Part shown: piece by piece, positions 1 through 57,955 of the stretch | How the letters are laid out: every line of letters starts with the position of its first letter | Position numbering within the stretch: the stretch's first letter is position 1 | Virus record (IMG/VR): IMGVR_UViG_3300019776_000324 | Location: 186,001-250,000 of that record | Direction: 5' to 3' (one strand) | Length of the DNA stretch: 64,000 bases | The notes under the pieces: generated by a model | What the model was told of the DNA's origin: nothing | The model's input: only the letters and a program-made list of their open reading frames with translations | Databases searched by the model: none | Translations under genes and position numbers: made by a program

Positions 1-210
1 GGCAACTATGGTTACAATGCCGCAACCGGTACATACGGCGACATGGTAGAACAAGGTGTTATTGATCCTACTAAAGTTACCAAGACTGCTTTGGTCAATG
101 CCGCAAGTATTGCTGGTTTGATTCTTACCACAGACTGTTCAATTGCACAGATCCCTGCCAAAGAAGGCCAGGCTCAACCGCAAATGGGTGGCATGGGCGG
201 TATGATGTAA
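1..210 (+). CDS. groL: Chaperonin GroEL, C-terminal fragment (gene starts before the window)
   Basis: Frame 1 reads [46 protein letters not shown]...QMGGMGGMM*, the GroEL C-terminus with GGM tail. Confidence 0.97.
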
Positions 211-235
211 TTAGTAGTTAATTTGTAATAAATAT

Positions 236-298
236 TACTGTGGGTGCCGATGGTCGGGCCCACAGTATTATGTCACTTGCTTAATAAAGGAGAAAACA
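236..298 (+). promoter_or_regulatory. Structured 5' leader of hsp20: hairpin plus ROSE-like anti-SD element
   Basis: Stem TACTGTGGG(236-244)/CCCACAGTA(259-267) encloses GCCGATGGTCGG; then CTTGCT-taataa-AGGAG (UYGCU opposite the SD). Second copy at 18155-18209. Confidence 0.7.
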
Positions 299-742
299 AT
301 GACAAGACTTACAACTCTGGACCTCAGTCCATTCTATCGCAACTCAATCGGTGTAGACAAATTATTTGATCGTTTGCTTGGTCAAATTGATGCTGGCGGA
401 ACTACACAGAACTATCCACCATACAATATTGTAAAAACTGGCGACAACACCTACGAGATTCAAGTAGCTGTTGCTGGCTTTACGCAGGGTGAAGTTACTG
501 TAAATGTTAACGAAGGTAATTTGATTATCACTGGTGAGAAATTATCTAAAGAATTGCCAGAAGGTCATGTGTATGAGCATCAGGGCATCAGCGCCCGTCG
601 TTTTATGCACACATTTACCTTGGCTGACTATGTAGAAGTAACTAGCGCACTAAGCAAGGACGGTATTCTTACTGTCAAGCTAGAACGCCAAGTTCCTGAA
701 GCAATGAAGCCTAAAACTATTGCGATATCATACGAATCGTAA
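299..742 (+). CDS. Small heat shock protein (Hsp20/IbpA family)
   Basis: NYPPYNI, AVAGF, HQGISARRF, DGILTVKL and C-terminal I-x-I motifs; AGGAG SD. Confidence 0.95.
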   Translation: MTRLTTLDLSPFYRNSIGVDKLFDRLLGQIDAGGTTQNYPPYNIVKTGDNTYEIQVAVAGFTQGEVTVNVNEGNLIITGEKLSKELPEGHVYEHQGISARRFMHTFTLADYVEVTSALSKDGILTVKLERQVPEAMKPKTIAISYES

Positions 743-804
743 TATAATATAGTAAATACAGTGGAGGGCATACTGCTCTCCACTATAATAACAAAGGAAC
801 TTGT

Positions 805-1113
805 ATGTCACAAGCTGGAACAGTTACAAAAATAGAAGTTAATCAAATTCTTAAAGAACCTCCAATGTTTAAGGTGATCTATCTTAACGATAATCAAACC
901 AGTATGGAATTTGTAATTGAAACTCTATTAGACTTTTTTAATTATACTCCAGACACCGCAGTAAAAATTACCCAAGATATCCACGAACAAGGATCAGCAG
1001 TGGTAGCAGTATTGCCATATGAAGTTGCTGAACAAAAAGGCATCGAAGTAACAGTAAGTGCCCGCAGTCAAAATTATCCACTACAAGTTAAACTAGAGCC
1101 AGAATCGGCTTAA
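805..1113 (+). CDS. clpS: ATP-dependent Clp protease adaptor ClpS
   Basis: EPPMFKVIYLNDNQTSMEFV...IHEQGSAVV..YEVAEQK...YPL. Confidence 0.95.
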   Translation: MSQAGTVTKIEVNQILKEPPMFKVIYLNDNQTSMEFVIETLLDFFNYTPDTAVKITQDIHEQGSAVVAVLPYEVAEQKGIEVTVSARSQNYPLQVKLEPESA

Positions 1114-2464: not shown

Positions 2465-2917
2465 ATGATAATAATAATAAGATTTACTCTGCTATGTATA
2501 ATTGCGATCTCCTTACAAGCCGTCGCAGTGTCAGCAGAACTGATTCATCAGTTTAACAGCCCCGCCTTCAGCGGAATTGGCTGGTCCAGTCATGTGCTAA
2601 CCATTGAGCAGATGGAAGCCGCACGGGCTCAAAAAATCAAAGACGAAAACAAGGCTGCGCAAGATAAAGCTGAGCGCGACGCTAAAAACACTAACTTGGC
2701 TAAGTTTTTAGTCAATGTGGAAAGTCGTATCTATGCACAATTATCCAAGCAACTAGCAGATGCCATGTTCAGTGATGGCGGAAATAGTGGTAACATGGAC
2801 TTTCAAGGTACAAATATCAATTGGGTTAAAACCGCAACTGATGTTACATTAACAATTACGGAAGCTGGCGGCGGTGTAACGCAGATAACAGTTCCGTTGG
2901 CGAGCTTTGCATTCTAA
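2465..2917 (+). CDS. csgF: Curli assembly protein CsgF-like
   Basis: Signal peptide, then AELIHQFNSPAFSG (cf. CsgF N-terminal FxFxNPxFGG); SRIYAQLSKQL; immediately upstream of csgG. Confidence 0.8.
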   Translation: MIIIIRFTLLCIIAISLQAVAVSAELIHQFNSPAFSGIGWSSHVLTIEQMEAARAQKIKDENKAAQDKAERDAKNTNLAKFLVNVESRIYAQLSKQLADAMFSDGGNSGNMDFQGTNINWVKTATDVTLTITEAGGGVTQITVPLASFAF

Positions 2918-3699
2918 TGAAACGGCTTGCTATACTCTTCTGCACACTAGCCCTCTCAGGTTGCGCTAATCTTCACATGATGGCCGCACAGGAAGAACCT
3001 GTGGTCGTTCAACCCAAAGAAAATTTAATGGCCAAACTACCTACACTAGAAGGCCCACCAATGACTGTAGCAGTGTATGGGTTCAAAGACCTAACTGGAC
3101 AAATGAAACCCAACGACAAACTAGCAGTATTCAGTAAGGCTGTTACGCAAGGTGCAGAAGTATTTTTAATTAAGAGTCTACAAGATTCTAGAGGATGGTT
3201 TAGAGTTGTTGAGCGTGTTGGACTTGACAACCTAATTAAAGAGCGTCAACTTATACGCAATCAGCGTGAAGTGTACGAAGGTAAAGATGCCAAAGCATTA
3301 AAGCCACTAACTGTGGCAGGTGTCTTGATTGAGGGCGGAGTTATTGGCTATGACAGCAATATACGCTCAGGTGGTAACGGTGCCAGATTTTTAGGCATCG
3401 GAGGCAGTCAACAATACAGAGTAGATGAAGTTACAGTTAGTCTTAGACTAATCAGTATTGCATCCGGCGAAGTATTGTTAACCAACGCTGTAAGTAAAAC
3501 CATTTACTCTACAGCACATGATGTAGGTGTACTAAAGTTTGTAGATAATGCAACCAAAGCATTGGAAATTGAAACTGGCACCGCATTAAATGAGCCCACG
3601 ACTTATGCAGTTCGTGTGGCCATTGAGCAGTCAGTTTACGAAATGATAGTAGACGGACAACGAAAGGGTCTTTGGAATTTTGTCCAAAGCAAAAACTAA
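2917..3699 (+). CDS. csgG: Curli secretion channel CsgG (outer-membrane lipoprotein)
   Basis: Lipobox LSGC; VAVYGFKDLTGQ, FSKAVTQG, WFRVVERVGLDNLIKERQLIR, IEGGVIGYDSNIRSGGNGARFLGIG, NEP motifs. Confidence 0.95.
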   Translation: MKRLAILFCTLALSGCANLHMMAAQEEPVVVQPKENLMAKLPTLEGPPMTVAVYGFKDLTGQMKPNDKLAVFSKAVTQGAEVFLIKSLQDSRGWFRVVERVGLDNLIKERQLIRNQREVYEGKDAKALKPLTVAGVLIEGGVIGYDSNIRSGGNGARFLGIGGSQQYRVDEVTVSLRLISIASGEVLLTNAVSKTIYSTAHDVGVLKFVDNATKALEIETGTALNEPTTYAVRVAIEQSVYEMIVDGQRKGLWNFVQSKN

Positions 3700-3700
3700 A

Positions 3701-4321
3701 ATGAAATCAAGTATGACAAGCGTTTGTAAGTTGCTGAGTAAATTACTTACTGTAGTAGGAATCGTAGCCATGGGTAGTGCGATGGCCAATGAAGTTTATG
3801 TCGAGCAAGTAGGCAGTGGATCTACAATTAACATATTACAAGAAGGTTCTGATAATAGAATTGGCACAAGTTTATCGCCAGCCTATATTGGGTCTGGATC
3901 TAATACAGTTAATATTGATCAAATTGGTGCCAACAATACCTTAGACATGGTGGTTAATGGATCATCAACAGATGTTACAGTATCAACCACTGGTAGTAAT
4001 AACACTCAAGAGATTCAGTGCGGTACGACTGGGTCATCTGGTTGCGGTGGTAGTGTAATTACTCAAACCATTACAGGAGATAACAATACTGTACGACAAC
4101 TGCTAGGTGCTGGTGCCAATCATACCAGTAATATTGCAGTAACAGGTGATACCAATACTGTTACTCATACTAGTACTGCCACAGGCACAACCTCGGCAGA
4201 TATTACTGTAACAGGAAACACTAATACAGTAGCAGTTACTCAATCAGGAATGTTGAATCATAGTGTCACGGTTAATAGTAGCGGTAACCTTAATAACATT
4301 AGCATTATTCAGCGAGACTAG
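3701..4321 (+). CDS. Secreted curlin-like (CsgA/CsgB-type) beta-solenoid repeat protein
   Basis: Signal peptide ending AMA-NE; repeated (Q/T)-x-G-x-x-N strands rich in G/S/N/T/Q; lies directly after csgG. Confidence 0.75.
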   Translation: MKSSMTSVCKLLSKLLTVVGIVAMGSAMANEVYVEQVGSGSTINILQEGSDNRIGTSLSPAYIGSGSNTVNIDQIGANNTLDMVVNGSSTDVTVSTTGSNNTQEIQCGTTGSSGCGGSVITQTITGDNNTVRQLLGAGANHTSNIAVTGDTNTVTHTSTATGTTSADITVTGNTNTVAVTQSGMLNHSVTVNSSGNLNNISIIQRD

Positions 4322-5348
4322 TATATCAGCGGTAGGGAAAGTTACAGAACAAACTGGCCCTACCGAGATAGTTAGAAACAAAAAGTCCTCGCCGAGTGCG
4401 GTTAATGCGCCAGTCGAAATGAACGACACTATCATTACGGCCAAGGCAAAGGCAAAATTAACATTTGAAGATAACACCACAATAAACATTACAGAACAAA
4501 GTAAAGTATTGATTGATGACTTTGTTTATGATCCAAAGAACAAAGATGCTGGCAAACTGTCAATGAAGATGGTACAAGGTACAGCTCGATATGCGTCAGG
4601 ACAGATTGCTAAAAACAATCCTCAGGCAGTAAACATACAAACACCCACAGCTACAGTAGCAGTGCGTGGCACAGATTTCTCAATGACAGTAGATGAACTA
4701 GGTCGTAGTCTTGTTATGTTGTTACCAAGTTGCGATAAGAAAGGTTGTGTTACTGGAGCAATTAGTGTGAGTAATGAAGCTGGTACAGTATTTCTTGATG
4801 TGGCATTTCAGGCCACATTAGTTACTAGTATTTCAGTACCGCCACAGGCACCAGTAATAGTAACTATTGATACTGCTAACATTAATAACTTGTTGATTGT
4901 TAGCCCTCCTAAGGAAGTAGTTAAAGACACAAATGAAAACTCTCAGAAAACTGCACTTGATATAAACTTCTTAAACAAAGATCTACTCAAGTACAATGAA
5001 TTAGATAAAAACGAATTGGAAAAATTTAGATCCTTGGACATTAACTTTTTAGATGTAGACTTATTGGTAAACCTATTAGACCTAAGCACTGCACAACTAT
5101 CAGCCAGTCAAGAACAACTGTCTAACGAAGCTTCGTTGTTACCAAAGTATTCGCCAGCTTCTGGAATAACTTACTATTTTAGTGATGACGAAAGTAAAGT
5201 AATTCTTCGTAAAGTTACCACACATATTGCAGAAGTTACTGTACCTGTAGACCACGATGTTGTAATTAATATCACGCAGGATGGTACAGCAGTAACACAG
5301 CAAGTCAATCGCGGTGGAACATCAGTTATCAATATCATTCAGCGTTAG
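4263..5348 (+). CDS. Exported FecR-domain protein
   Basis: Signal peptide; VGKVTE..G, DTIIT, LTFEDNTTINITEQSKVLIDDFVYDP, TPTATVAVRGTDF motifs. Confidence 0.85.
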   Translation: MSRLIVAVTLITLALFSETSISAVGKVTEQTGPTEIVRNKKSSPSAVNAPVEMNDTIITAKAKAKLTFEDNTTINITEQSKVLIDDFVYDPKNKDAGKLSMKMVQGTARYASGQIAKNNPQAVNIQTPTATVAVRGTDFSMTVDELGRSLVMLLPSCDKKGCVTGAISVSNEAGTVFLDVAFQATLVTSISVPPQAPVIVTIDTANINNLLIVSPPKEVVKDTNENSQKTALDINFLNKDLLKYNELDKNELEKFRSLDINFLDVDLLVNLLDLSTAQLSASQEQLSNEASLLPKYSPASGITYYFSDDESKVILRKVTTHIAEVTVPVDHDVVINITQDGTAVTQQVNRGGTSVINIIQR

Positions 5349-5441
5349 CTCCTGAGTAAGTATGCCGTTTATATTTTACGATTAATTCTTAAATAGAATG
5401 CAGGCATTATAACTAAAACAAGCCGGCTACGAAGGATTTTT

Positions 5442-5472
5442 AAGTACCCACTTTATTGTGGGTATTTTTTTC
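5442..5472 (+). terminator. Intrinsic terminator after the FecR gene
   Basis: TACCCAC-tttatt-GTGGGTA followed by a T-tract. Confidence 0.65.
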
Positions 5473-5484
5473 ATTAAATACTCT

Positions 5485-7533
5485 ATGCTTAAAAAAATAA
5501 TAACAAGTCCTTGGACAGCATTACTAACATTGGCACTAGTAGTTGGATTGCGTGTAGCAGATCCTACTTTTGTTGAAAGCGTTCGTCTGCGCTACTTTGA
5601 CACACTAGTAACTAGTAAACCTGCAGAGGTCATTGGAGTTAGTGTTGTAAACATAGACGAGAAAGCCTTAGAAAAATATGGTCAATTCCCTTTCAGTCGC
5701 GATATCTACGCTTCCGTTATTCGAGAACTTTATCGTCGTAACGCTGGTCTGGTGGTTTTTAATATTCTTACTCCTGATCGCGATCGTATGGGTCAGGATC
5801 AATCTTATATCCAAGCACTCAGACAGTTCCCAACCATCCTACCTAGTATTGGATCTACACAAACAAGAAACCAACCAAGAAACCCAGGAACGATTATAAT
5901 TGGACCATACCAAAATCAAATAGTTACATATCCTGGAATTATTGCCAACATACCTGCTGTTGAAAATGCAGCTGCTGGAGTTGGAATTGTAAACACTTTT
6001 CCAGAAGTTGACGGAGTAGTAAGACGCATGCCGTTGGTAGTAATGAGCGATCAAAAACTTTATCCTGGTATGGCCATGGAAGTGTTGCGTGTAGCAGCAG
6101 GAGACTCGACATTCCAGGTTAAACTAAACGAGAATGGTGTAGAGAAAATGCGCATTCCAAAGTTTGGACCTATTGCTACTGATAGTTTAAGTCGTATTTG
6201 GATTGACTGGAGTTTGGTTCCGGACAAGTATAGTTTAACCAATCTGCCAGATGATTTTGAAGGTGAAATAGTTATTGTGGGTGTGTCAGCCCAAGGATTA
6301 AGTAATCCAGTAGCAACAAGCATGGGTGAAATGCTACCACAAGATTTACAAGCAGCAGTATTAGGCACAGTAATAGCAAATAAAGATCGACCTGCTATCA
6401 CTCGCCCAGATTGGGCCGATGGCGCTGAAATTATATTTGTGTTAGTGGCAGGTATTTTATTATTATTTTTATCAAGGTGGGTTTATGTTGGACTTTGTGC
6501 ATCTGTTGTTATACTCGGCGGGAGTTTACTATTTTCTAGTTGGGCTTATGGAAGTCTCGCTTGGCTTGTGGACGCAACTGTTCCGGTCGCTGGTCTTGTC
6601 ATTGTGCTTCTTCATGCTTATGGTGTTAAGTTTGTAAGTGAGTTCTTACAGAAGCAAGCGATCAAGAAACAGTTTGCTGGCTACTGCTCTAAAGAAGTTG
6701 TGGATATGTTGCAGAAGGATCCAGACTTGATCAAGCGTGGTGTGCGTAAGGATGTAAGTGTTATGTTTAGTGACCTGCGTGGCTTTACTCCTATTGGTGA
6801 ACACTACGGTGATGATGTTGCTGGACTTGGCAAGTACATGAACGGCTATATGGATGCTATTAGTCAGCCTATCATGGACAACAAAGGCATGGTTATCAAG
6901 TATGTAGGAGATGCAAGTATGCATATTCACGGTGCTCCTATTGAAGATCCTAATCACGCAAGAACAATCGTTGCTGTCGGTCTACAAATGTTAGATGCTG
7001 TAGACGAGTACACTAAGCTAATGGAAGCACAAGGCTTACCTCCTGCGGCAATGGGCTGGGGTTGTAACTCGGGCATTGGCTTTATTGGCGAAATGGGAAG
7101 CACAGATAGACACAGCTATGACATTTTAGGTGATATGGTTAGTACGGCGGCACGATTAGAAGCTCGTTGCAAAGCATATGGTGTACTATGTATTATTGGT
7201 GCTGAAACTTACAATCGTACCAAAGATGATTTCTTCTACCTGTTGTTAGATAACTTACAACCAAAAGGTAAAACTGTGGCAGACTTGATCTACACAGTAT
7301 TACGCACCAAAGGCGCAGACTACACCAAAGAACTATCAACACATAACAAGATGCATGCATTATACAAAGAGAAAAATTTTGATGCGGCCGCTATCTTATG
7401 TGGAGAATTAATTGGTAAGTTTGGCGGACAAATGGACAAGTACTATAAGATTTGGATCGAGCGTTGCGAGTTTATGAAAGAACAGAACTTACCAGAAAAC
7501 TGGAATGGTGAATTTGTAGCGCACGAAAAATAA
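5485..7533 (+). CDS. CHASE2-domain membrane-bound class III adenylate/guanylate cyclase
   Basis: N-terminal TM; CHASE2 (IDEKALEKYGQFPFSR, DGVVRRMPL); three TMs; cyclase motifs MFSDLRGFT, KYVGDA, GEMGS, YDILGDMVSTAARLE. Start placed at ATG 5485 (ORF track 5458). Confidence 0.92.
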   Translation: MLKKIITSPWTALLTLALVVGLRVADPTFVESVRLRYFDTLVTSKPAEVIGVSVVNIDEKALEKYGQFPFSRDIYASVIRELYRRNAGLVVFNILTPDRDRMGQDQSYIQALRQFPTILPSIGSTQTRNQPRNPGTIIIGPYQNQIVTYPGIIANIPAVENAAAGVGIVNTFPEVDGVVRRMPLVVMSDQKLYPGMAMEVLRVAAGDSTFQVKLNENGVEKMRIPKFGPIATDSLSRIWIDWSLVPDKYSLTNLPDDFEGEIVIVGVSAQGLSNPVATSMGEMLPQDLQAAVLGTVIANKDRPAITRPDWADGAEIIFVLVAGILLLFLSRWVYVGLCASVVILGGSLLFSSWAYGSLAWLVDATVPVAGLVIVLLHAYGVKFVSEFLQKQAIKKQFAGYCSKEVVDMLQKDPDLIKRGVRKDVSVMFSDLRGFTPIGEHYGDDVAGLGKYMNGYMDAISQPIMDNKGMVIKYVGDASMHIHGAPIEDPNHARTIVAVGLQMLDAVDEYTKLMEAQGLPPAAMGWGCNSGIGFIGEMGSTDRHSYDILGDMVSTAARLEARCKAYGVLCIIGAETYNRTKDDFFYLLLDNLQPKGKTVADLIYTVLRTKGADYTKELSTHNKMHALYKEKNFDAAAILCGELIGKFGGQMDKYYKIWIERCEFMKEQNLPENWNGEFVAHEK

Positions 7534-7534
7534 T

Positions 7535-7948
7535 CTAATTTACAGGCACACGAAGATGCACAGCTATGGCGCTGGCACCACCTGCATTAACTTGTGGAAT
7601 AGCGATAGCACATAGATAACTGTAACAAACTTCAGGAAATGCCATGGGTGCAATCTTGTAGGAATTATATCCTGTTACTAGTCCAGCACCAATGCCTATG
7701 TCCCAAGGCCCGTCCTTATATAAAGCATAACGAGCATAACCATAGGTGCTGCCACGATACTCGCTATTGCGATACCAACCACCAGCAACTGACCAACTGT
7801 CTGTAATAGTTTGTTCAAGGCCTGCTCCGTAATTAAATCCATTGAACCCAGGGCGGTCATGCACACTGGCTCCGTTGACTTGGATATATGTTTCTGCTAA
7901 TGATAGATTGCATACTGCTATTAACAGCATAGCTACAAGTGTTTTCAC
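7535..7948 (-). CDS. Small outer-membrane beta-barrel, PagP-like
   Basis: Signal peptide; SVH..FNGFNYGAGLE, GGWYRNSEYRGSTY, GAGLVTGY pattern of alternating beta-strands. Confidence 0.55.
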   Translation of the reverse strand: MKTLVAMLLIAVCNLSLAETYIQVNGASVHDRPGFNGFNYGAGLEQTITDSWSVAGGWYRNSEYRGSTYGYARYALYKDGPWDIGIGAGLVTGYNSYKIAPMAFPEVCYSYLCAIAIPQVNAGGASAIAVHLRVPVN

Positions 7949-7956
7949 ACTTTTAC

Positions 7957-8253
7957 TTATTTGTCTTTTTTAACGACTTCGTTAATTTGTGATTCAGCTT
8001 CTACACGCTCGTGCTCGATGGTCTTGCCGCGTAGGTGTAATACTGTGTTTACTTTTTGATTTAAACGAATTAAATCATTATCCAGCATGCGGATACGATC
8101 AATAAGAGCAATAAGAACTGTATTGGCGTCATTGATAACTGGCTTAACTTCTGTAGTAGCCCAAATCCAAACATATTTAATAATCATCCCCATTCCGACG
8201 GCCATAACAATTGGAAAGCCGTATTTGTTTACTAAGTTTACTATTTCGCCCAT
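7957..8253 (-). CDS. Small membrane protein (GFPI motif, single TM plus coiled coil; holin/YvrJ-like)
   Basis: NKYGFPIVMAVGMG...ALIDRIRMLDNDLIRL; paralogue of 8883-9164. Confidence 0.55.
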   Translation of the reverse strand: MGEIVNLVNKYGFPIVMAVGMGMIIKYVWIWATTEVKPVINDANTVLIALIDRIRMLDNDLIRLNQKVNTVLHLRGKTIEHERVEAESQINEVVKKDK

Positions 8254-8254
8254 T

Positions 8255-8449
8255 TTATTTCTTCCACGGTGATGATGCACCGCCCTTTTCTAGTCTATCT
8301 ATTTTTTTCTGTAAGTCTTTATTAAGTTTGACCCATTGCTTGCCATTTTCAATTGCTTCGTTTAGTGTTAACAAAGCATACATGCTTATAATAATAGCAA
8401 TGCCACCCATGATAAAGCCAATAAACGCATAAGTTACTTCTAACATCAT
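8255..8449 (-). CDS. Hypothetical membrane protein
   Basis: Hydrophobic N-terminus from MMLEVTYAF, then coiled coil. Confidence 0.45.
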   Translation of the reverse strand: MMLEVTYAFIGFIMGGIAIIISMYALLTLNEAIENGKQWVKLNKDLQKKIDRLEKGGASSPWKK

Positions 8450-8743: not shown

Positions 8744-8883
8744 TATTCGGCCTTGTTTAAATCACTTAGTCGATCAGCACAAGCACGAATGTTTTTGCTT
8801 AATTCACCGAATCCAATTCTTTGTTCTACTTGGTGAGCAATACTGTGTAATTGCATAACTAGATATTCAATATCAAAGTCCAT
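8743..8883 (-). CDS. Hypothetical 46-aa protein (not in the ORF track)
   Basis: MDFDIEYLVMQLHSIAHQVEQRIGFGELSKNIRACADRLSDLNKAE*; TAATG overlaps at both ends. Confidence 0.55.
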   Translation of the reverse strand: MDFDIEYLVMQLHSIAHQVEQRIGFGELSKNIRACADRLSDLNKAE

Positions 8884-9164
8884 TAGTCTCTCCGTGCATC
8901 ATTCTTGCCGTCGGCACGAGCAATACGATCTGTGTCGGGCTTTAAGCCTAGTGCGTTACTGACAATAGTGTCAATACGGATAACATCGTGATTCATTGTT
9001 TTAACACGATTATCTAAGGCTGTAATAATGCCAGCCATGCCTTTAATAGCTGACAGAACTCCAGCTAGTAATAGTTTAATTGTGAGATATACAAAGTAAC
9101 CACCAGCAAGTGCAGTGGCAATTGGAAAACCTAGATCCCCAATGATTTTGAAGATTTCATTCAT
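8883..9164 (-). CDS. Small membrane protein (GFPI motif), paralogue of 7957-8253
   Basis: GDLGFPIATALAGG...ALDNRVKTMNHDVIRI; AGGAG SD and upstream ATAAATA. Confidence 0.6.
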   Translation of the reverse strand: MNEIFKIIGDLGFPIATALAGGYFVYLTIKLLLAGVLSAIKGMAGIITALDNRVKTMNHDVIRIDTIVSNALGLKPDTDRIARADGKNDARRD

Positions 9165-29883: not shown

Positions 29884-30147
29884 TTAAATTTCTTCTTCTA
29901 ACCGATATCCACATCCATTGGGAATTCCTGACACTGTCAATGCTGTAACATCAGGATATCGACGACAGCCTTCGGGTCTAGTTTCATAGATATTACAAGT
30001 ACCATGTTCAGTATTGTATTCTGGACAAAATGTTTCAACATAAGTTTCTGAATCAGTGTAGGTTCTGACCCTGCAACATCCTCCATTGCAGGCTAGGCCA
30101 CCTAGGCATTGGCCACGAACCACAAGGTTGATCCATATTACACCCAT
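29884..30147 (-). CDS. YkgJ/CxxCxxCC-type cysteine-cluster protein
   Basis: C...CNGGCC...CP......CNIYETRPEGCRRYP. Confidence 0.7.
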   Translation of the reverse strand: MGVIWINLVVRGQCLGGLACNGGCCRVRTYTDSETYVETFCPEYNTEHGTCNIYETRPEGCRRYPDVTALTVSGIPNGCGYRLEEEI

Positions 30148-33100
30148 GCTATGTATTCTATATCAATGTTGCCCAAGTCAATAGCACCACCTGTGATGTT
30201 CATGAATTGTATGCTCAATGTGTCTGCGGCACTTGCCCATGCAGCAGTAATAAAGATACCGTAAGTCAGTGCAGTTCCTACTGAAATAACCACCTTGTGA
30301 TTGGTAGTTAATCCAGTTAAGGTAAATGTTTGTGTACTAGCCGCAGTCTTACCAACCGATGCTGGGTTAATAACTAGGGTGCTTTTTAGTATGCTACTGC
30401 TTGCAAACACACCAGTTAGGGCTGATCCATTACCAACAAAGTTGCCACTAGTGGTAATATTACCTGTGGCAGTTACTTGTCCGGCAGTTGAAATATTGCC
30501 ACTTGTAACATTACCAGTGGCACTTACTATACCACCTGTTAGAACATTACCACCTGTGACATTACCAGTTACACTCAGACTTGATAATGTACCAACGCTG
30601 GTAATGTTAGGCTGACTTGCAGTTAATACTGTGCCAGTTAAGTTGCCAGTTACATTGCCTGTATGAATACCAAATGTGTTGCTGTTGACATTTCCAGCTG
30701 TAATATTTCCGCTGACACTTAATGCGCTAAGAGTTCCAATGGCTGTGATATTAGTCTGACTTGCTGTGGTCAGTGTACCTGTAATATTTGTACCAGATAA
30801 GTTGCCACCTGCAATGTTACCGACAACACTTAAACTTGTCAATGAACCAACACTGGTTATATTAGTTTGAGCAGCAGTGGTTAATGTACCTGTAATATTT
30901 GTACCAGACAAGTTGCCAGCAGTAACATTACCAGAGACACTTAAACTTGATAGTGTGCCAACACTGGTAATATTTGGTTGTGCGGCAGTAGTTAATGTGC
31001 CAGTGACATTGGTAACAATCAAGTTACTACCTACAATATTTCCTAATGCACTTACTATACCGTCGGTATTGATATTGGCTCCACGAACATTACCTGTAGC
31101 ACTTACAATTCCAGTAGTTAATAAATTGCCAGAACTGGTATTACCACTTACACTTACACTAGTTAATGTACCGACGCTAGTGATGTTTGGTTGTGCGTTT
31201 CCAGTTACAGTCACCGCAGTTGTTGCAGTTGTAGCAACTACACCAGTCAACACAGATCCGTTACCAATAAAGAAGCTACCTGTGATGTTGCCGGTGGCTG
31301 AAATTCCATCACCCGAAGAAATAGCACCAGTTGCGCTAACTTGTCCAGTGGTTAAAACATTACCACCAGCAATATTACCCGAGGCAACAACAATACCACC
31401 AGTTCTGATATTGCCACCATCCACATTACCTGTAGCACTTACTAGACCTGTGGTTCTTAGGTTGCCGCCAGAGATATTGCCAGTTGAGCTCAATACACCA
31501 CCAGTATTAATGTTGCCACCTGTGATGTTGCCTGTGGCTGATATCGATGAACTAAATGTTCCAGCTGTGGCAACCAAGTTGGCACCTGTGATGTTGCCTG
31601 TGGCTGATATGGCTGAACTAAATGTTCCAGCGGCAGCAATTAAATTAGCACCTGTGATATTACCTGTGGCACTAATAGTTCCAGCAGTTGCAAAGTTGGC
31701 ACCGGTTACATTACCGCTGGCACTCATCTGCCCACTAGTTCTTAGGTTGCCTGCATTAACATTTCCACTAACACTTGCGCTGGTCAGTATGCCCACGCTG
31801 GTAATATTTGGTTGAGCAGCCGTAGTTAATACAGAACTCGAGAATGGTGCTGTAATATTACCAGTAATACTGAGATTTGTTCCAAACACATTTCCTGATG
31901 CTGACAAGTTTGCGGCCTGTACAAGACCAACTACACTTAGGCCTGTGTCGGTAATAGTAGCACGAAGATTGCTGGTATTTGATCCTCCTGTGACAAACTG
32001 TATTACCTGTCCTGCATTGTTGGTAATCAATAAAAGATTTCCGCCACTAGCTGAAACAAATGTATCACTGTCGCCAAGTATTGATAAATCTGGATTTGAA
32101 AAAGTGCTACTGGTTATACCAATGGCTGCCGAGTAAGATGGACTATCTACACCTAGATCATTTAAAGCAACAAACATAGACATAGCATTAGTACCCGAGC
32201 TATGATTAATCTGTACTAACTGTGCAGGATTATTTTGATTCGCATCAATTTGAACTATTGCATTGCCGTAATTGATACCCTCGTAGGCTGCACCAAAGTG
32301 TGCAGTTCCGTTGGCTACCAAGTTGGCAACAGCTATGTCATCGGCAGTTAACGCTAATGTCTTTAGTCCAGCACCGTCAGTATCCCAACGATTGTTGTTT
32401 AAGTTATATAAGAATGTTCTGTAGTAACTACCATTCGAAACATTACCAAGAATCATACCACCGCCATCAATCTGTGTATTACTTGTAGAATTGTTTGCTA
32501 AGGTAAAGTTTTTATCGTTGATTGAGATGGTATTGGCTGATGTGCTAGTACCAGTGATTACAATATTACCTACAGTGATATTACCAAACTGTACACTAGA
32601 ATTAGTATTAATATTCTGTGGTAGACTTAATGTCAAGTTCTTGCCACCTGAATCAGACACAATAACTTGATTGGTAGTGCCAACTACATTTTGCACACCA
32701 GTGGCATTGATAGCCACATTACCTTGTGTTACTGTCTGTGTAAGACCGGTACCTACTGTTAGACTTTGAACCACTTGTGTAGGAACAAAAGCTGTATTTT
32801 GGAAAGTAGTGTCAGGGAATGTTATACCAGAGCCTGCTACTGGTAATGTAATACCATCAGTGTCAAGTTGCAGTGCATTTACACCAGCACTTCCACCAAC
32901 AGGTGTTAATTTAAATTGTGCGTATGTTCCTTTGCCGCTAGTGTTGGTTACAAAATCTTCCGCAGCAAAGAACTGTAAGCCTGCTACTTGTCCTGTACTA
33001 TAACTAGGAATGCCGTTGGCAACAGTACCAGTCATACCAAGCCCACTAAAGCTGGCTAGAATGTCGTTTTGTAAAACATAGTGAGGATTGTCAGCTGTTC

Positions 33101-35108
33101 CACGGCTTGCTCTAAGAGCAATTAATCCGTAACCTGCTTGCGCTGGCTGTGGGCCTGTGTTGCTAGTTGCATAACCATCAACAGTGATACGAGCAAGAGT
33201 ATTGTCGTTACCAGTAATGTGGATCATACCACCAGCGCCATTAACTGGTTGGTAGTTGCCAGAACTACTACCAACAATGTTTAATGCACCAGCTGTTCCT
33301 GTTGGAATATTATTGGCATTAATAGATACAAATCCGTTATTAAAGGCACTAAACACATTACGAGTGTTTGCACTGTCTCTAACAGCAATAGAACGATTGA
33401 ATACAACATTGCCTGTGGCACCAACAGTACCGATTGTGATGTCTTGTTGCAAATTGCCAATGGTAATTGCATTGTTGTAAAAAGTAAAGTCTGCTACAGT
33501 CAAGCCACCAGCATTGGCAATAACCAAATTGCCACTTTGGGCCAATAAGTTTACAGTGATATCTTCGACTGAGTCTTTGATGTTTAAACCGCCAGTACCA
33601 GCATAGATACTGTTCCAGTAGTTAGTCCCAGTTCCTAGTTCAGATGTATCTGGATTAGTTGGCAAGAATGAACTGTTGGTATAAACATTGCCCGAATCAG
33701 CATTGATACTGATATTACCTGTGCTAGTGGTGATATTGTAGCCACCTTCATCAGTGTATAACAAGGTATTGCTCATTGCAACGGCCGGTACAGCAACTAC
33801 ACCAGATCCTTCTGGAACAATATTAATATTGCCATTGATAGTAGTGCCACTAATGGTTTGACCTGTTATGCTTAGTAGGCCAACTTGCGAAGGAATACCA
33901 GTGAGTTGGCTAGCATTACCAAACAAGTAACTACCTGAGATATTTCCTGGAGTTGTAATGGTGCCAGTGGCTGTAATTAACCCATTAACATTTAAATTGG
34001 CACCGCGAATATTTCCTTGAGCAATAATAACACCGTCGGTGTTTATTGACCCAGTAACACTAAGATTGCCGCCGCTTAGATTACCAGTATAGGTTGGCAA
34101 GTAAGCAGCCACATTGGCATTGCCATACTGTGCTGGCAAGCCAGTTAACTGACTGCCATCGCCGATAAAATACCCAGCTGTGATATTACCTGTGGTACTG
34201 ACACTAGTATTACTATTATTGGTTAAAACTGGTTGTCCAGCAACAGTCAGTACATTACCTGTAGTGCCTAAACCAACACCACCAATGTAAACTGTGTTAG
34301 AACTGAACCATGCATCACGCCACCAGTTGGTACTGTTGCCCAAACTATAAGTTACATTGGCTGCAGGAATAATATTGCTGGCCACATTGGCAAAGTTTAC
34401 GCCACTTGGTGCTGCATCAACCCATTGGCTACCATCATCGTCGGTGTACCAAACATACAAACGACCCGATACTTCATCCCACCAAAGTGTTTGATCAGTT
34501 GGATTTGTAGGAGCTGAACTGCTTTGAATTACTCCACCACCAATTGCTTGTCCATTTGCATAGGATATGTTTATACTGCTGATCCAACTGTTGGTATTAG
34601 ATTGATATAAGAAAGTTGCAATATTTGAATTTGCACCAACCAATATGCCTGACCCATTGGCTGCATTGGCAGTGCTGGCTGAGTTTGCCAGATGTATTGT
34701 CTTTGAATCTGTTGTAATGTTACCCAGTTCAATAATGTCGCCTTGAACTGTTAAATCACCACCTACTGTTAAATTACCAGCTATTGATAAGCCACCCGAC
34801 ACATCAACATATTGCAAATACGCTGTAGCCCAGCGTTGTGTAGGGCTACCTAGGTTTCTAATATTAGCCAAGTTTGGTACAATGCTTACATTGGCTTGTA
34901 CTACTCCTATACCGTTTGGTGCTAGAATCAAATTACCATTGGTATTTGTAGTTAATATAGTATTGTTGGCAATACGAACATTACTTAACACTGGCCCTGC
35001 GGCAAAAACCTGATCAAAATTCAAGTTTACATCATTAAATGCGGTTCTTAAAGGGTCGCCAGTACCATCATTTGGTAGTGCGCCGATGTTGATTACATAT
35101 TGAGTCAT
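30138..35108 (-). CDS. Giant (1656 aa) Gly/Asn/Thr-rich fibre / baseplate-associated protein
   Basis: N-terminal INIGALPNDGTGDPLRTAF..VNLNF (T4 gp9/gp10-like start); dozens of SATGNITGGN repeats and repeated LTTAAQPNITSVGTL units. Confidence 0.8.
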   Translation of the reverse strand: MTQYVINIGALPNDGTGDPLRTAFNDVNLNFDQVFAAGPVLSNVRIANNTILTTNTNGNLILAPNGIGVVQANVSIVPNLANIRNLGSPTQRWATAYLQYVDVSGGLSIAGNLTVGGDLTVQGDIIELGNITTDSKTIHLANSASTANAANGSGILVGANSNIATFLYQSNTNSWISSINISYANGQAIGGGVIQSSSAPTNPTDQTLWWDEVSGRLYVWYTDDDGSQWVDAAPSGVNFANVASNIIPAANVTYSLGNSTNWWRDAWFSSNTVYIGGVGLGTTGNVLTVAGQPVLTNNSNTSVSTTGNITAGYFIGDGSQLTGLPAQYGNANVAAYLPTYTGNLSGGNLSVTGSINTDGVIIAQGNIRGANLNVNGLITATGTITTPGNISGSYLFGNASQLTGIPSQVGLLSITGQTISGTTINGNINIVPEGSGVVAVPAVAMSNTLLYTDEGGYNITTSTGNISINADSGNVYTNSSFLPTNPDTSELGTGTNYWNSIYAGTGGLNIKDSVEDITVNLLAQSGNLVIANAGGLTVADFTFYNNAITIGNLQQDITIGTVGATGNVVFNRSIAVRDSANTRNVFSAFNNGFVSINANNIPTGTAGALNIVGSSSGNYQPVNGAGGMIHITGNDNTLARITVDGYATSNTGPQPAQAGYGLIALRASRGTADNPHYVLQNDILASFSGLGMTGTVANGIPSYSTGQVAGLQFFAAEDFVTNTSGKGTYAQFKLTPVGGSAGVNALQLDTDGITLPVAGSGITFPDTTFQNTAFVPTQVVQSLTVGTGLTQTVTQGNVAINATGVQNVVGTTNQVIVSDSGGKNLTLSLPQNINTNSSVQFGNITVGNIVITGTSTSANTISINDKNFTLANNSTSNTQIDGGGMILGNVSNGSYYRTFLYNLNNNRWDTDGAGLKTLALTADDIAVANLVANGTAHFGAAYEGINYGNAIVQIDANQNNPAQLVQINHSSGTNAMSMFVALNDLGVDSPSYSAAIGITSSTFSNPDLSILGDSDTFVSASGGNLLLITNNAGQVIQFVTGGSNTSNLRATITDTGLSVVGLVQAANLSASGNVFGTNLSITGNITAPFSSSVLTTAAQPNITSVGILTSASVSGNVNAGNLRTSGQMSASGNVTGANFATAGTISATGNITGANLIAAAGTFSSAISATGNITGANLVATAGTFSSSISATGNITGGNINTGGVLSSTGNISGGNLRTTGLVSATGNVDGGNIRTGGIVVASGNIAGGNVLTTGQVSATGAISSGDGISATGNITGSFFIGNGSVLTGVVATTATTAVTVTGNAQPNITSVGTLTSVSVSGNTSSGNLLTTGIVSATGNVRGANINTDGIVSALGNIVGSNLIVTNVTGTLTTAAQPNITSVGTLSSLSVSGNVTAGNLSGTNITGTLTTAAQTNITSVGSLTSLSVVGNIAGGNLSGTNITGTLTTASQTNITAIGTLSALSVSGNITAGNVNSNTFGIHTGNVTGNLTGTVLTASQPNITSVGTLSSLSVTGNVTGGNVLTGGIVSATGNVTSGNISTAGQVTATGNITTSGNFVGNGSALTGVFASSSILKSTLVINPASVGKTAASTQTFTLTGLTTNHKVVISVGTALTYGIFITAAWASAADTLSIQFMNITGGAIDLGNIDIEYIAWV
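31519..31670 (-). repeat. 66-bp tandem repeat inside the fibre gene
   Basis: CCTGTGATGTTGCCTGTGGCTGATAT at 31519 and 31585, a variant at 31651 (22-aa unit ISATGNITGANLxAxAGTFSSx). Confidence 0.85.
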
Positions 35109-46467: not shown

Positions 46468-46479
46468 TATAAATACGTG

Positions 46480-47727
46480 ATGATATATACCCGGCAACAA
46501 TTTTTAAAACAGTTTAAACTAAACAAAAATATTAGTTATACAGACTTTTGCTCAAAGATTGCTGTTCTCAACGGCAGTGATACTTCTGGGCAATTTGTTA
46601 CTCGCAGTGACTTGGATACCTTTGTTAAGAAGAACGCAACCAAAGACAATCGTGTCAGTAGGCTAGACGATTACAAGAAGAAACTGTACCAAGTGCTGGT
46701 TACAGATGCAGATGAAGCACTAGGACAGTGGTTTGACCGTACTGCTGCTATCTCTGAAAATATTGATTATTATTTTCAACTTCCAAATGCCAGCATACTT
46801 GAAGACAAGACATTTGCTGGGCGCACACATTCCAAGTATGGTCGCTTGTGTAAGAATATAAACTTTGAGCAGTTCTTCAACACACGCAAACTATACTCCA
46901 ATGACTTTGAATATACATTTGGCTTGATGCGAGCCATGTTTGAAGATTTTAAAATTCGTAATAGTTTGGTTGGCCCTGCTATGTTTGATCATATATGCCG
47001 TATAGAAGATCGTAACTACGGGCAGTTCTGGACTGACTTTATGATGGGGTGTAATCGTGCAAGCGTATTCAATCCTGTAACATATCGTGGCATACTAGAT
47101 GAACTATTGCCAGGAGAAACATTGTTTGCACCTGTTATGGGTTGGAATAGCTATCAGCTGGCATTTTATAACAGTCACTTTAAACATTTTGTAGCTACTG
47201 ATGTGATTCCAGAAGTAGTCAACAATGGAAAGAAATTACACCAAGAGTGGTTAGCGTATAAAGATCGCAGTTTATTTGAACTAGAGGACAAGACTGTTAA
47301 GTTATATTGTTCGCCCAGCGAAGAGCTAGCAAAGGGCACAGACTTTGTGGCTATGTATCAAGGTCAAGTTGATGCGGTGTTGTTTAGTCCACCATACTTT
47401 GACTTAGAGATATATCCCAGTGCTGACCAAAGTTTTACTAACTATCCCAACTATCAAGATTGGTTATTGAACTATTGGGAAGCTACAGTTAAGACAGCTA
47501 AACAAGTTCTCAAACCTGGCGGCCGCTTTGCTTTTGTAATTAGTAACTATCGTAACAAGGCCAAACAAGAAGTCGCTATTAGCCAAGACATGCGAGATAT
47601 AGTTGAATTACATTTAGGTAAACCTACACACTATAAAGTACAGTGGTCTGCTATTGCTGGAGGTCGACAAGCTATGAAAACTAGAGATGGTAATTTTGAA
47701 GATCTCTGGTTATTTGAAAAGGATTAA
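46480..47727 (+). CDS. DNA amino-methyltransferase (N4-C/N6-A type)
   Basis: Degenerate motif I FAPVMGWNS, ATDV, catalytic SPPYF, LKPGG. Confidence 0.75.
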   Translation: MIYTRQQFLKQFKLNKNISYTDFCSKIAVLNGSDTSGQFVTRSDLDTFVKKNATKDNRVSRLDDYKKKLYQVLVTDADEALGQWFDRTAAISENIDYYFQLPNASILEDKTFAGRTHSKYGRLCKNINFEQFFNTRKLYSNDFEYTFGLMRAMFEDFKIRNSLVGPAMFDHICRIEDRNYGQFWTDFMMGCNRASVFNPVTYRGILDELLPGETLFAPVMGWNSYQLAFYNSHFKHFVATDVIPEVVNNGKKLHQEWLAYKDRSLFELEDKTVKLYCSPSEELAKGTDFVAMYQGQVDAVLFSPPYFDLEIYPSADQSFTNYPNYQDWLLNYWEATVKTAKQVLKPGGRFAFVISNYRNKAKQEVAISQDMRDIVELHLGKPTHYKVQWSAIAGGRQAMKTRDGNFEDLWLFEKD

Positions 47728-57506: not shown

Positions 57507-57955
57507 TGATGGATGCCCATTCTCAAATGGCCGAAGCACTAGCTGATAGCATGACTGTATCGGTTAGTGCTCCTGGAACTTATAGTACAATTACCAATGG
57601 CGGGTTTGCCTACTCTAACACTGCTATTACCAACAACGGTGTTGCTACTGGATCCTTAGGACCGTACACTGTTAGCACTGGTTATTCACAACCATGGTTC
57701 AGCAACTCTGCTAGTCCAAAAATCCGTTTAGATGGTGAAGACGCTGACATAGAAGTCAACGGCGAAAGCCTCATGGGCTTGATGAAAGAAATCCGCGAAC
57801 GACTAAATCTCATAACCATTAACGAAAAGATGGAAAAGGAATGGGACGAACTACGAGCCTTAGGTGATCAATATCGTGCCCTAGAAGCCAAGTTAAAAGA
57901 ACAAGGCGAAATGTGGAACAAGCTAAAAGCTATGCCACCGCCTGATATCAAGTAA
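57506..57955 (+). CDS. Hypothetical protein with a C-terminal coiled coil
   Basis: ADIEVNGESL...IRERLNLI...EWDELRALGDQYRALE. Confidence 0.6.
   Translation: MMDAHSQMAEALADSMTVSVSAPGTYSTITNGGFAYSNTAITNNGVATGSLGPYTVSTGYSQPWFSNSASPKIRLDGEDADIEVNGESLMGLMKEIRERLNLITINEKMEKEWDELRALGDQYRALEAKLKEQGEMWNKLKAMPPPDIK

What the first reader, a model, noticed from the sequence alone, without database searches (positions are those of the whole stretch)
3701..5348. Curlin-like protein and FecR protein end in the same C-terminal strand (I-x-IIQR)
Seen: the curlin-like protein ends NNISIIQRD and the FecR protein ends SVINIIQR, preceded by a curlin-like VVINITQDG strand. Inference: a shared terminal beta-strand could be a CsgG-targeting signal, or could let the FecR protein stack onto the curlin beta-solenoid. 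That would physically couple fibre and signalling relay. Canonical E. coli curlin is targeted by an N-terminal peptide, so a C-terminal signal would be new.
Basis: partly seen in the sequence, partly recalled or inferred. Interest (0 to 1): 0.6.

Follow-up and report, generated by a model that had tools for sequence, protein, structure and literature searches.

The report
Phage sensor protein with curli-docking tail
In a 344-kb jumbo phage, a secreted FecR-domain protein encoded next to a curli fibre subunit ends in the same kind of terminal beta-strand as the fibre subunit, and modelling suggests this tail clips onto the first rung of the subunit, which would tie the phage's curli machinery to a neighbouring membrane cyclase sensor.

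Summary
The curlin-like protein (3701-4321) ends NNISIIQRD*. The FecR-domain protein (4263-5348) ends VVINITQDG...TSVINIIQR*. About 70 distinct homologues were read, from jumbo phages, pelagimyophages and the most divergent members. In all of them both proteins end [IVL]x[IVL]xQ plus 1-3 residues.

The window lies in a 344-kb phage with terminal repeats. The csgF-csgG-curlin-fecR cluster with a CHASE2 cyclase is the phage type VIII secretion cluster already described in pelagiphages.

For the curlin, the strand is ordinary: E. coli CsgB ends IRVTQR* and CsgA ends ATAHQY*. What has not been described is the FecR tail, a confidently folded 60-residue C-terminal beta domain found only in these phage proteins. 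A complex model (ipSAE 0.84; controls 0.00) places its last strand parallel and in register on the curlin's first rung, with Q360 on Q47. That is where a neighbouring curlin's own C-terminal strand should dock.

The "CsgG-targeting signal" reading remains untested and unsupported. The link to cyclase signalling is inferred from gene order only. Sequence similarity between the tail and curlin repeats is weak.

The parts
2465..2917 (+). CsgF-like secretion/assembly factor
   Evidence: Pfam PF10614 CsgF, E 4.8e-15. Conserved directly upstream of csgG in nearly all 80 related loci.
2917..3699 (+). CsgG-like outer-membrane lipoprotein channel (lipobox LSGC)
   Evidence: Pfam PF03783 CsgG, E 1.4e-52; NCBIfam CsgG 4.9e-53, below the equivalog cut-off.
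3701..4321 (+). Curlin-like fibre subunit, 206 aa: signal peptide residues 1-29, then about seven strand-arc-strand rungs. It is the only curlin gene in the phage genome.
   Evidence: Pfam Curlin_rpt 22.9 bits, over the 20.7 cut-off. Only one gene in the genome matches Curlin_rpt. 66-sequence alignments A2/A4.
3788..3847 (+). First rung of the mature curlin (residues 30-49, NEVYVEQVGSGSTINILQEG): the predicted docking site for the FecR tail
   Evidence: Interface residues 30-49 in the complex model. It is the most conserved segment of the curlin: mean column identity 0.74 against 0.61-0.67 elsewhere.
4292..4318 (+). C-terminal strand of the curlin (NNISIIQRD)
   Evidence: Q204 is invariant in 66 sequences. 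E. coli CsgB and CsgA end the same way.
4263..4321 (+). 59-nt dual-coding overlap: curlin C-terminus in one frame, FecR signal peptide in another
   Evidence: An overlap of 47-77 nt, always in the same frame relation, is present in 63 of 64 distinct loci.
4263..5348 (+). FecR-domain protein, 361 aa: signal peptide 1-23; beta domain 22-215; low-confidence linker 216-300 with LDxNFLxxDLL repeats; C-terminal beta domain 301-361
   Evidence: Pfam PF04773 FecR, E 2.2e-12. AF2 models. Residues 22-97 match 5ix9 at Z 9.8 and residues 52-215 match PupR 6ovk at Z 8.2.
5163..5345 (+). FecR C-terminal domain (residues 301-361, six strands), the curlin-docking module
   Evidence: AF2 pLDDT 89.9 and pTM 0.77 for residues 282-361. 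No solved fold matches it. Only phage FecR clusters match in the Atlas. Its profile finds 133 cluster representatives in 1.84 billion, always at the C-terminus.
5223..5246 (+). FecR strand 321-328 (HIAEVTVP), predicted to pair with curlin EVYVE (residues 31-35)
   Evidence: Contact list of the complex model.
5319..5345 (+). FecR C-terminal strand 353-361 (TSVINIIQR), predicted to pair in register with curlin TINILQ (residues 42-47)
   Evidence: Lowest-error contacts are 44/357, 45/358, 46/359 and 47/360. It is the most conserved strand of the domain, 0.69.
5442..5467 (+). Terminator-like hairpin with a T run after the FecR gene
   Evidence: It is a consensus match only; the number of such sites is not above shuffles.
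5485..7533 (+). CHASE2 sensor / class III nucleotide cyclase. The ORF opens at GTG 5458, but ATG 5485 is the likelier start.
   Evidence: Pfam CHASE2 1.1e-36 and Guanylate_cyc 1e-13. Both metal-binding Asp motifs (FSDLRGFT, YVGDA) align with solved cyclases. The gene is near the module in most related loci, in varying position and strand.

Best explanation
The shared ending is the terminal 'motif b' strand of a curlin-type rung. In the curlin it is the ordinary C-terminal overhang with which one subunit docks on the first rung of the next. The FecR-domain protein is a Sec-exported soluble protein whose last 60 residues form a small beta domain. One face of that domain (strands 321-328 and 353-361) imitates the C-terminal end of a curlin subunit. 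By parallel, in-register beta-sheet augmentation it clips onto the N-terminal rung of the phage curlin (EVYVEQ plus TINILQ), placing Q360 on Q47 and N357 on N44. The FecR protein would therefore sit at, or create, the N-terminal end of a curlin stack, as nucleator/anchor or as cap. This genome has no CsgB-like second curlin and no CsgE. Through its N-terminal FecR domain, the protein would report the state of curlin secretion or assembly to the adjacent CHASE2 cyclase. Shown here: conservation, domain architecture, gene linkage and restriction to phage modules. Modelled: the docking geometry. Inferred only: nucleator versus cap, periplasmic versus surface location, and any contact with the cyclase.
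For: The complex model of curlin 30-206 with FecR 282-361 gave ipSAE 0.84 (runs 0.59, 0.86, 0.84) against a best control of 0.00. The runs agree in at least 98% of contacts and partner pLDDT is at least 78. That mark was reached by 58 of 80 solved complexes and 2 of 110 mismatched pairs, and these counts hold only roughly because my own alignments were used. The interface is curlin 30-49 with FecR 321-328 and 353-361, and the residue pairs rise together, so the strands are parallel and in register. The FecR end is conserved in all homologues read, from 82% down to about 30% identity. hhalign aligns FecR 318-361 end to end with the last two curlin rungs, P 1.8e-4; the local score of 17.1 compares with a mean of 3.6 and a maximum of 11.4 in 100 column shuffles. 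Curlin rung 1 and FecR strand 6 are the most conserved segments of their regions. Curlin N44 and FecR N357 co-occur in three separate lineages. Head-to-tail R5/R1 augmentation is the established curli interface (PMC10192328). The genome has no CsgE and only one curlin gene. FecR-domain proteins pair with CHASE2 sensors in bacteria that lack curli genes there (L090, L091; PMC5192318).
Against: Similarity of the tail to curlin repeats is weak. Pfam Curlin_rpt does not hit it, and a curlin HMM scores it at E=44 among 3026 ORFs. On its own, AF2 folds the C-domain as a compact six-strand unit whose best structural matches are partial Ig-like sandwiches (Z 3.9) with no CsgA match, so it is not a plain curlin solenoid. 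The complex score is a model's confidence, not a measurement, and curlin-on-curlin stacking could not be run for comparison. The covariation rests on 3 independent pairs, with exceptions (L035, L014/17/18, L064), and is not significant. Curlin is thought to be unfolded in the periplasm, so where the contact could happen is open. No test of FecR with CHASE2 was possible.
Confidence: 0.5

Rival explanations
1. The C-terminal strand is a secretion signal recognised by the phage CsgG/CsgF channel. It would be shared by every substrate of the operon (curlin, FecR protein, and the second curlin of pelagimyophages), replacing the N22/CsgE route of E. coli.
For: All exported non-channel proteins of the module end with the motif, including the second curlin of Melnitz and HTVC008M (...SVTQN*...TVTQN*). 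The mature curlin starts directly with rung 1 and has no N22-like segment. No CsgE is found in the genome.
Against: E. coli CsgA and CsgB end the same way, yet CsgA is targeted by N22 (PMC10192328). That paper says N22-like segments are the exception, so their absence is uninformative. The docking model already accounts for the conservation. The strand sits inside a confidently folded domain. No tool here could test recognition by CsgG.
Confidence: 0.15
2. The FecR C-domain is an independent beta domain with another partner (CsgF, CsgG, the CHASE2 domain or the cell wall). Its resemblance to a curlin end would be convergent, the generic look of an amphipathic strand ending in Gln, and the predicted docking would be an artefact of the sticky open end of a beta-solenoid.
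For: HMM-level similarity is not significant. The fold is not solenoid-like in the fold searches. In bacterial FecR-CHASE2 pairs the extra domain differs, for example LysM (PMC5192318), which shows the accessory domain is exchangeable.
Against: Three controls with unrelated proteins scored 0.00 against 0.84. The tail is found only in modules that contain a curlin gene directly upstream. The contact puts Gln on Gln and Asn on Asn in register.
Confidence: 0.25
3. The curlin's terminal strand is conserved because the same DNA encodes the FecR signal peptide, so the motif is a by-product of dual coding.
For: The 47-77 nt overlap is present in 63 of 64 distinct loci.
Against: In L009 the genes lie 583 nt apart, and in HTVC008M they abut without overlap; both curlins still end ...SITQSD* and ...DIIQRD*. 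The FecR C-terminus itself is not overlapped in this window.
Confidence: 0.03

Closest known systems
Phage-encoded type VIII secretion (curli) clusters of pelagiphages (Zaragoza-Solas 2020, PMC7029224; Buchholz 2022, PMC9004378; the 2022 mSystems pelagiphage study, PMC9599517)
   Same: Same gene set and order: csgF, csgG, curlin, FecR-domain gene and adenylate cyclase, with no csgE. The FecR protein is 44% identical over 69% of its length to those of HTVC008M and Melnitz.
   Different: Here the cluster sits in a 344-kb phage with terminal repeats, and relatives lie on 300-364 kb contigs. There is only one curlin gene. Text searches of the 2022 mSystems study found no mention of a C-terminus, a signal peptide or jumbo phages, and the other two papers do not mention FecR at all. 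That study treats FecR as an iron-related regulator.
CsgB, the minor curlin and nucleator of E. coli curli
   Same: It also ends in a strand-Gln-one-residue terminus (IRVTQR*). It presents a curlin-like end on which the major subunit polymerises, and it is cell-associated through CsgF (PMC10192328).
   Different: CsgB is a full five-repeat curlin. The FecR protein has only a 60-residue pseudo-rung domain behind a 190-residue FecR-type domain and a long linker. No nucleating activity is shown.
FecR/PupR anti-sigma regulators (periplasmic cell-surface signalling domain, PDB 6ovk)
   Same: The Pfam FecR domain is present, and residues 52-215 match the PupR domain structurally (Z 8.2, rmsd 4.0, 135 aligned). 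That domain relays a signal from an outer-membrane protein to an inner-membrane signalling step.
   Different: There is no cytoplasmic anti-sigma domain and no transmembrane helix, only a cleavable signal peptide. The likely partner is a CHASE2 cyclase rather than a sigma factor, and there is an extra curlin-like tail.
RIN retention domain of RTX adhesins (MpIBP, PDB 5ix9; PMC5550230)
   Same: Residues 22-97 superpose at Z 9.8, rmsd 1.8 A, over 69 of 76 residues with 22% identity. RIN is a periplasmic plug that keeps a secreted fibre-like adhesin anchored in its outer-membrane pore.
   Different: RIN works with a type I TolC-like pore. Whether the phage domain plugs CsgG is speculation, and the match is fold-level only.
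LysM-FecR protein plus CHASE2 histidine kinase ('BiofilmReg' operon of Burkholderia, PMC5192318)
   Same: An exported FecR-domain protein is encoded next to a CHASE2 sensor. Acidobacterial loci L090 and L091 show the same pairing without curli genes.
   Different: The accessory domain there is LysM at the N-terminus, which binds peptidoglycan. Here it is a C-terminal curlin-like domain, and the output is a cyclase rather than a kinase.

Membership tests
Curlin (CsgA/CsgB family), for the 3701-4321 product | Tandem curlin repeats (Pfam PF07012) | tested here: met
   22.9 bits against a cut-off of 20.7, one stretch scored; 20.7 bits with neighbouring stretches in the genome scan. About seven Q-x-G-x-x-N rungs are visible in alignment A4. 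The NCBIfam CsgA and CsgB equivalogs score far below their cut-offs, so it is a curlin but not an orthologue of either.
Curlin (CsgA/CsgB family), for the 3701-4321 product | Sec signal peptide and a position in an operon with csgG and csgF | tested here: met
   The signal peptide with AMA/NE cleavage was read from the sequence and is conserved. csgF and csgG lie directly upstream in nearly all loci.
Curlin (CsgA/CsgB family), for the 3701-4321 product | Forms CsgG-dependent extracellular amyloid fibres | not testable with these tools
   Needs expression, Congo red or ThT assays and electron microscopy.
Curlin repeat, for the FecR tail 318-361 | Significant match to curlin repeat profiles | tested here: inconclusive
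   No Pfam Curlin_rpt hit, and the curlin HMM gives E=44. However, hhalign gives P 1.8e-4 end to end, with a score above 100 of 100 column shuffles.
Curlin repeat, for the FecR tail 318-361 | Beta-solenoid fold like CsgA | tested here: not met
   The model of the domain alone has its best matches to partial Ig-like sandwiches (Z 3.9), and no CsgA chain appears in the lists. I therefore call it a curlin-end mimic, not a curlin repeat.
FecR-type anti-sigma regulator | FecR periplasmic domain (PF04773) | tested here: met
   47.7 bits against a cut-off of 24, residues 56-145. PupR structure match at Z 8.2.
FecR-type anti-sigma regulator | N-terminal cytoplasmic anti-sigma domain followed by a transmembrane helix | tested here: not met
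   The protein starts with a 23-residue cleavable signal peptide directly followed by the beta domain, and this is conserved in all homologues. It is a FecR-domain protein, not a FecR regulator.
Type VIII secretion system (curli machinery) | CsgG channel plus CsgF | tested here: met
   PF03783 at 1.4e-52 and PF10614 at 4.8e-15.
Type VIII secretion system (curli machinery) | CsgE periplasmic adaptor | tested here: not met
   No PF10627 match in the whole 344-kb genome, while the E. coli control matched. This is as reported for phage and alphaproteobacterial systems (PMC9599517).
FecR-domain protein / CHASE2 sensor pair | Adjacent genes for an exported FecR-domain protein and a CHASE2 membrane sensor | tested here: met
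   The cyclase gene starts 137 nt after the FecR stop here. A CHASE2 cyclase lies within the flanks of most related loci. Bacterial pairs are seen in L090 and L091.
FecR-domain protein / CHASE2 sensor pair | Physical interaction of the two periplasmic domains | not tested

The most novel reading that the evidence does not exclude
The FecR protein is a trans-envelope tether. Its N-terminal domain, which resembles the RTX-adhesin retention plug, stays folded in the periplasm. The 85-residue linker threads the CsgG-CsgF channel. The C-terminal pseudo-rung sits on the cell surface, where it nucleates and anchors the phage curlin fibre. Fibre assembly or load would then be transmitted to the CHASE2 cyclase, giving the phage a cyclic-nucleotide read-out of its host's surface contacts.
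Probability: 0.12. Interest if true: 0.85.

Novelty: new variant of a known kind. Interest (0 to 1): 0.55.

Why it matters
Three papers call the purpose of phage-encoded curli clusters a mystery. They treat the FecR gene either as unannotated or as an iron-related regulator. A conserved curlin-docking tail on the FecR protein turns that gene into a concrete, testable link between the fibre subunit and a membrane cyclase. It also offers a candidate for the missing nucleator, anchor or cap in systems that have no CsgB and no CsgE. More generally, it would be a natural example of a globular protein that uses a two-strand imitation of an amyloid end to bind or seed a functional amyloid. The module is very abundant: more than 5800 protein clusters and more than 500 viral contigs carry it.

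Tried and rejected
- A curlin HMM searched against all 3026 ORFs of the phage scores the FecR tail at only E=44, so sequence-profile homology is not established. Pfam Curlin_rpt does not hit the tail either.
- Fold searches with the C-domain alone gave no clear match: Foldseek best E 0.09, VIA-wide best Z 3.9, and no CsgA chain. The feature search of the ESM Atlas gave nothing usable. The Atlas shape search found only phage FecR clusters.
- I first suspected that the 5ix9 match of the whole model belonged to the C-domain. The second look places it at residues 22-97.
- Covariation of curlin N44 with FecR N357: only 3 independent pairs on supported branches. They go the same way 2-3 times and never the opposite way, but the sign test cannot reach significance.
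- Dual coding as the cause of conservation is rejected, because L009 and HTVC008M lack the overlap and keep the motif.
- Cellular homologues of the C-domain: none in 400 sampled genomes of the class of the MAG that carries L087. The only hits in that MAG are two contigs carrying the same module, and the longer one shares further genes with the phage. The 'bacterial' MAG loci L084-L089 carry the same module and look like phage contigs.
- The long multi-stretch hits of the big profile search are WD40, BACON and Ig repeat proteins, which are false positives.
- Sequencing runs: only small shares (0.12 or less) in freshwater or aquatic metagenomes and no RNA run.
Full report
**What is at the coordinates**

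The + strand of 2465-7533 carries five genes:
- a CsgF-like gene, 2465-2917 (PF10614, 4.8e-15);
- a CsgG-like lipoprotein, 2917-3699 (PF03783, 1.4e-52);
- a curlin-like protein, 3701-4321 (Curlin_rpt, 22.9 bits against a cut-off of 20.7);
- a FecR-domain protein, 4263-5348 (PF04773, 2.2e-12);
- a CHASE2 class III nucleotide cyclase, ORF 5458-7533 with a likely start at ATG 5485.

The cyclase keeps both metal-binding Asp motifs. The window is bases 186001-250000 of a virus record of 344,244 bp with direct terminal repeats, estimated 100% complete. It is therefore a jumbo phage, not a bacterium. GroEL, Hsp20 and ClpS genes lie just upstream.

**The observation**

The curlin ends ...NNISIIQRD*. 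The FecR protein ends ...VVINITQDGTAVTQQVNRGGTSVINIIQR*. The two genes overlap by 59 nt, so the FecR signal peptide (MSRLIVAVTLITLALFSETSISA/VGKV) is read in another frame from the DNA that encodes the curlin's last strand.

A scan of IMG/VR found 503 stretches encoding relatives of the FecR protein, many on contigs of 300-364 kb. The word search found more than 5800 protein clusters. In the 80 loci fetched, csgF-csgG-curlin-fecR is syntenic, and a CHASE2 cyclase lies nearby in varying position.

The endings are conserved in every distinct homologue:
- The curlin ends [IV]x[IV]xQ[STR][DN]*.
- FecR ends ..[IL]x[IL]xQ[DSG]G....Qx[VI]NxG[GS]..x[IVL]x[IV]xQ[KRN]*.
- Q204 of the curlin and Q339, Q346, N349 and Q360 of FecR are invariant in 66 sequences.

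The same holds in three further groups:
- the isolated T4-like phages HTVC008M and Melnitz;
- five of the six MAG contigs that carry the module (the curlin ORF of L089 ends differently), plus L111;
- the most divergent family members (L112 ...TTRQN*, L114 ...NIKQSP*).

The second curlin of the pelagimyophage-type modules also ends ..V[TS]VTQN*. In the phage genome the C-terminal pattern occurs in 3 of 446 long ORFs. Only the literal 'IIQR' is lineage-specific.

**What the strand is in the curlin**

E. coli CsgB ends MAIRVTQR* and CsgA ends NATAHQY*. Ending one or two residues after the last strand's Gln is therefore normal for curlins. Sleutel et al. (PMC10192328) show three relevant things. 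Curlin subunits are beta-solenoids that end with a motif-b overhang at the C-terminus. They polymerise head to tail by R5/R1 sheet augmentation. [quoted passage not shown] The curlin's C-terminal strand therefore needs no new explanation, and the absence of N22 does not call for a C-terminal signal.

**What is unusual: the FecR tail**

- AF2 on a 66-sequence alignment gives a confident N-terminal beta region, a low-confidence linker (216-300) and a confident six-strand C-terminal domain.
- Folded alone, residues 282-361 reach pLDDT 89.9 and pTM 0.77.
- No solved structure matches the domain: Foldseek best E 0.09; VIA-wide best Z 3.9, to parts of Ig-like sandwiches; no CsgA chain. It is not a plain curlin solenoid.
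- In the ESM Atlas only phage FecR clusters share its shape.
- Its profile finds 133 cluster representatives among 1.84 billion. The match lies at the very C-terminus of proteins of about 340-400 aa or of fragments. The exceptions are repeat-protein false positives.
- It was not found in 400 sampled genomes of the class of the MAG that carries L087.

Sequence similarity to curlin repeats is weak. There is no Pfam hit, and the curlin HMM gives E=44. However, hhalign aligns FecR 318-361 end to end with the curlin's last two rungs at P 1.8e-4, and the local score exceeds all 100 column shuffles.

**Docking**

The one complex job was given curlin 30-206 and FecR 282-361.
- Score: ipSAE 0.84 (runs 0.59, 0.86, 0.84), against a best control of 0.00.
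- Consistency: the runs agree in at least 98% of contacts, and partner pLDDT is at least 78.
- Calibration: the mark was reached by 58 of 80 solved complexes and 2 of 110 mismatched pairs. These counts hold only roughly because my own alignments were used.
- Interface: curlin residues 30-49, its first rung, against FecR 321-328 and 353-361.
- Lowest-error pairs: 42/355, 43/356, 44/357, 45/358, 46/359, 47/360, and 31/322 to 35/326.

Because the numbers rise together, the strands are parallel and in register. VINIIQ lies on TINILQ, with Gln on Gln and Asn on Asn. This is the place where the C-terminal rung of a neighbouring curlin should dock. It explains why the two proteins end alike.

Three further observations are consistent with this:
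- Rung 1 is the most conserved part of the curlin, and strand 6 is the most conserved strand of the C-domain.
- Curlin N44 and FecR N357 co-occur in three separate lineages. With only three independent pairs and several exceptions this is suggestive, not significant.
- The phage genome has no CsgE and only one curlin gene. The role of nucleator, anchor or cap is therefore unassigned.

**The rest of the FecR protein**

Residues 52-215 match the periplasmic signalling domain of the anti-sigma regulator PupR (Z 8.2). Residues 22-97 match RIN (5ix9) at Z 9.8, rmsd 1.8 A, over 69 of 76 residues. RIN is the periplasmic plug that retains the RTX adhesin MpIBP in its outer-membrane pore (PMC5550230).

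The protein has only a signal peptide, with no anti-sigma domain or membrane helix. It is a FecR-domain protein, not a FecR regulator.

Exported FecR-domain proteins are encoded next to CHASE2 sensors in bacteria that have no curli genes at those loci. Examples are the acidobacterial loci L090 and L091 and the LysM-FecR/CHASE2-kinase operon of Burkholderia (PMC5192318). The simplest reading is that a FecR/CHASE2 sensor pair has acquired a curlin-binding accessory domain in place of, for example, LysM. Any contact with the cyclase is inference.

**What is already known**

Phage curli clusters were reported in pelagimyophages (PMC7029224) and in Melnitz (PMC9004378). Both papers regarded the clusters as incomplete and their function as unknown. 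The 2022 mSystems pelagiphage study (PMC9599517) identified the curlin, FecR, histidine kinase and cyclase genes, noted the lack of CsgE, and proposed regulation, sibling capture or import. Text searches of that study found no mention of a C-terminus, a signal peptide or jumbo phages. The module is therefore known. The curlin-mimicking, curlin-docking tail of the FecR protein appears to be undescribed, and I found no description of the module in 300-360 kb phages.

**Verdict**

CsgG targeting remains untested and has no positive evidence. The dual-coding overlap does not explain the conservation, because L009 and HTVC008M lack the overlap and keep the motif. I rate this a new variant of a known kind, of moderate interest.

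Noticed in passing
window 4263-4321: The last 19 codons of the curlin and the first 19 codons of the FecR signal peptide are read from the same DNA in different frames. An overlap of 47-77 nt with the same frame relation is present in 63 of 64 distinct loci. The start is GTG here and ATG or GTG elsewhere. This may be translational coupling.
   Followed up: partly
window 4326-4553 (FecR residues 22-97): The N-terminal domain of the mature FecR protein superposes on 5ix9, the periplasmic retention plug (RIN) of the RTX adhesin MpIBP: Z 9.8, rmsd 1.8 A, 69 of 76 residues, 22% identity.
   Followed up: partly
window 4908-5162 (FecR residues 216-300): This is a low-confidence linker with a repeated LDxNFLxxDLL motif and a run of invariant leucines (L237, L242, L247, L252, L263, L268, L272). 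Its partner or role is unknown.
   Followed up: no
window 4019-4045 and 4731-4748: There are invariant cysteine pairs in both exported proteins: curlin C107/C115 and FecR C157/C162. These are probably periplasmic disulfides. E. coli CsgA has no cysteine.
   Followed up: no
whole genome G000 (344,244 bp); window 1-1113: The host genome is a jumbo phage with terminal repeats that encodes GroEL (C-terminal end at 1-210), an Hsp20 (299-742) and ClpS (805-1113) just upstream of the curli module. No tRNA gene lies in the window.
   Followed up: partly
window 7957-8280 (-) and 8883-9164 (-): Two paralogous small membrane proteins (phrog_18771, unknown function; one has a weak holin-like N-terminus) flank the module. 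Homologues also lie directly upstream of csgF in L111.
   Followed up: partly
window 7535-7948 (-): A 137-aa protein with a signal peptide and a weak match to the outer-membrane beta-barrel family (PF13505, E 0.024) sits directly after the cyclase gene. Homologues are near the module in L004, L008 and L040.
   Followed up: no
window 5442-5467: A ten-pair hairpin followed by a T run lies between the FecR stop and the cyclase ATG at 5485. It overlaps the upstream GTG (5458) that opens the ORF, so the cyclase may be a separate transcription unit.
   Followed up: partly
window 2465-7533: The only public runs holding words of this operon (shares of 0.12 or less) are freshwater or aquatic metagenomes. 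The 2020 pelagimyophage paper reported that freshwater pelagimyophages lack the curli cluster.
   Followed up: no
L084-L089, L111 (MAG contigs labelled Flavobacteriaceae, Pelagibacter, Legionellales, Rhodobacteraceae, Pirellulales, Bacteroidetes): Contigs binned into bacterial MAGs of six different phyla or classes carry the same phage-type module, and L111 shares further genes with the jumbo phage. They look like phage contigs binned with bacteria.
   Followed up: partly
window 57955-59337 and 46477-47727: A radical SAM protein and a DNA methyltransferase-like protein are encoded further downstream. Several very large ORFs (for example 30138-35108, 1656 aa) have no PHROG match.
   Followed up: no
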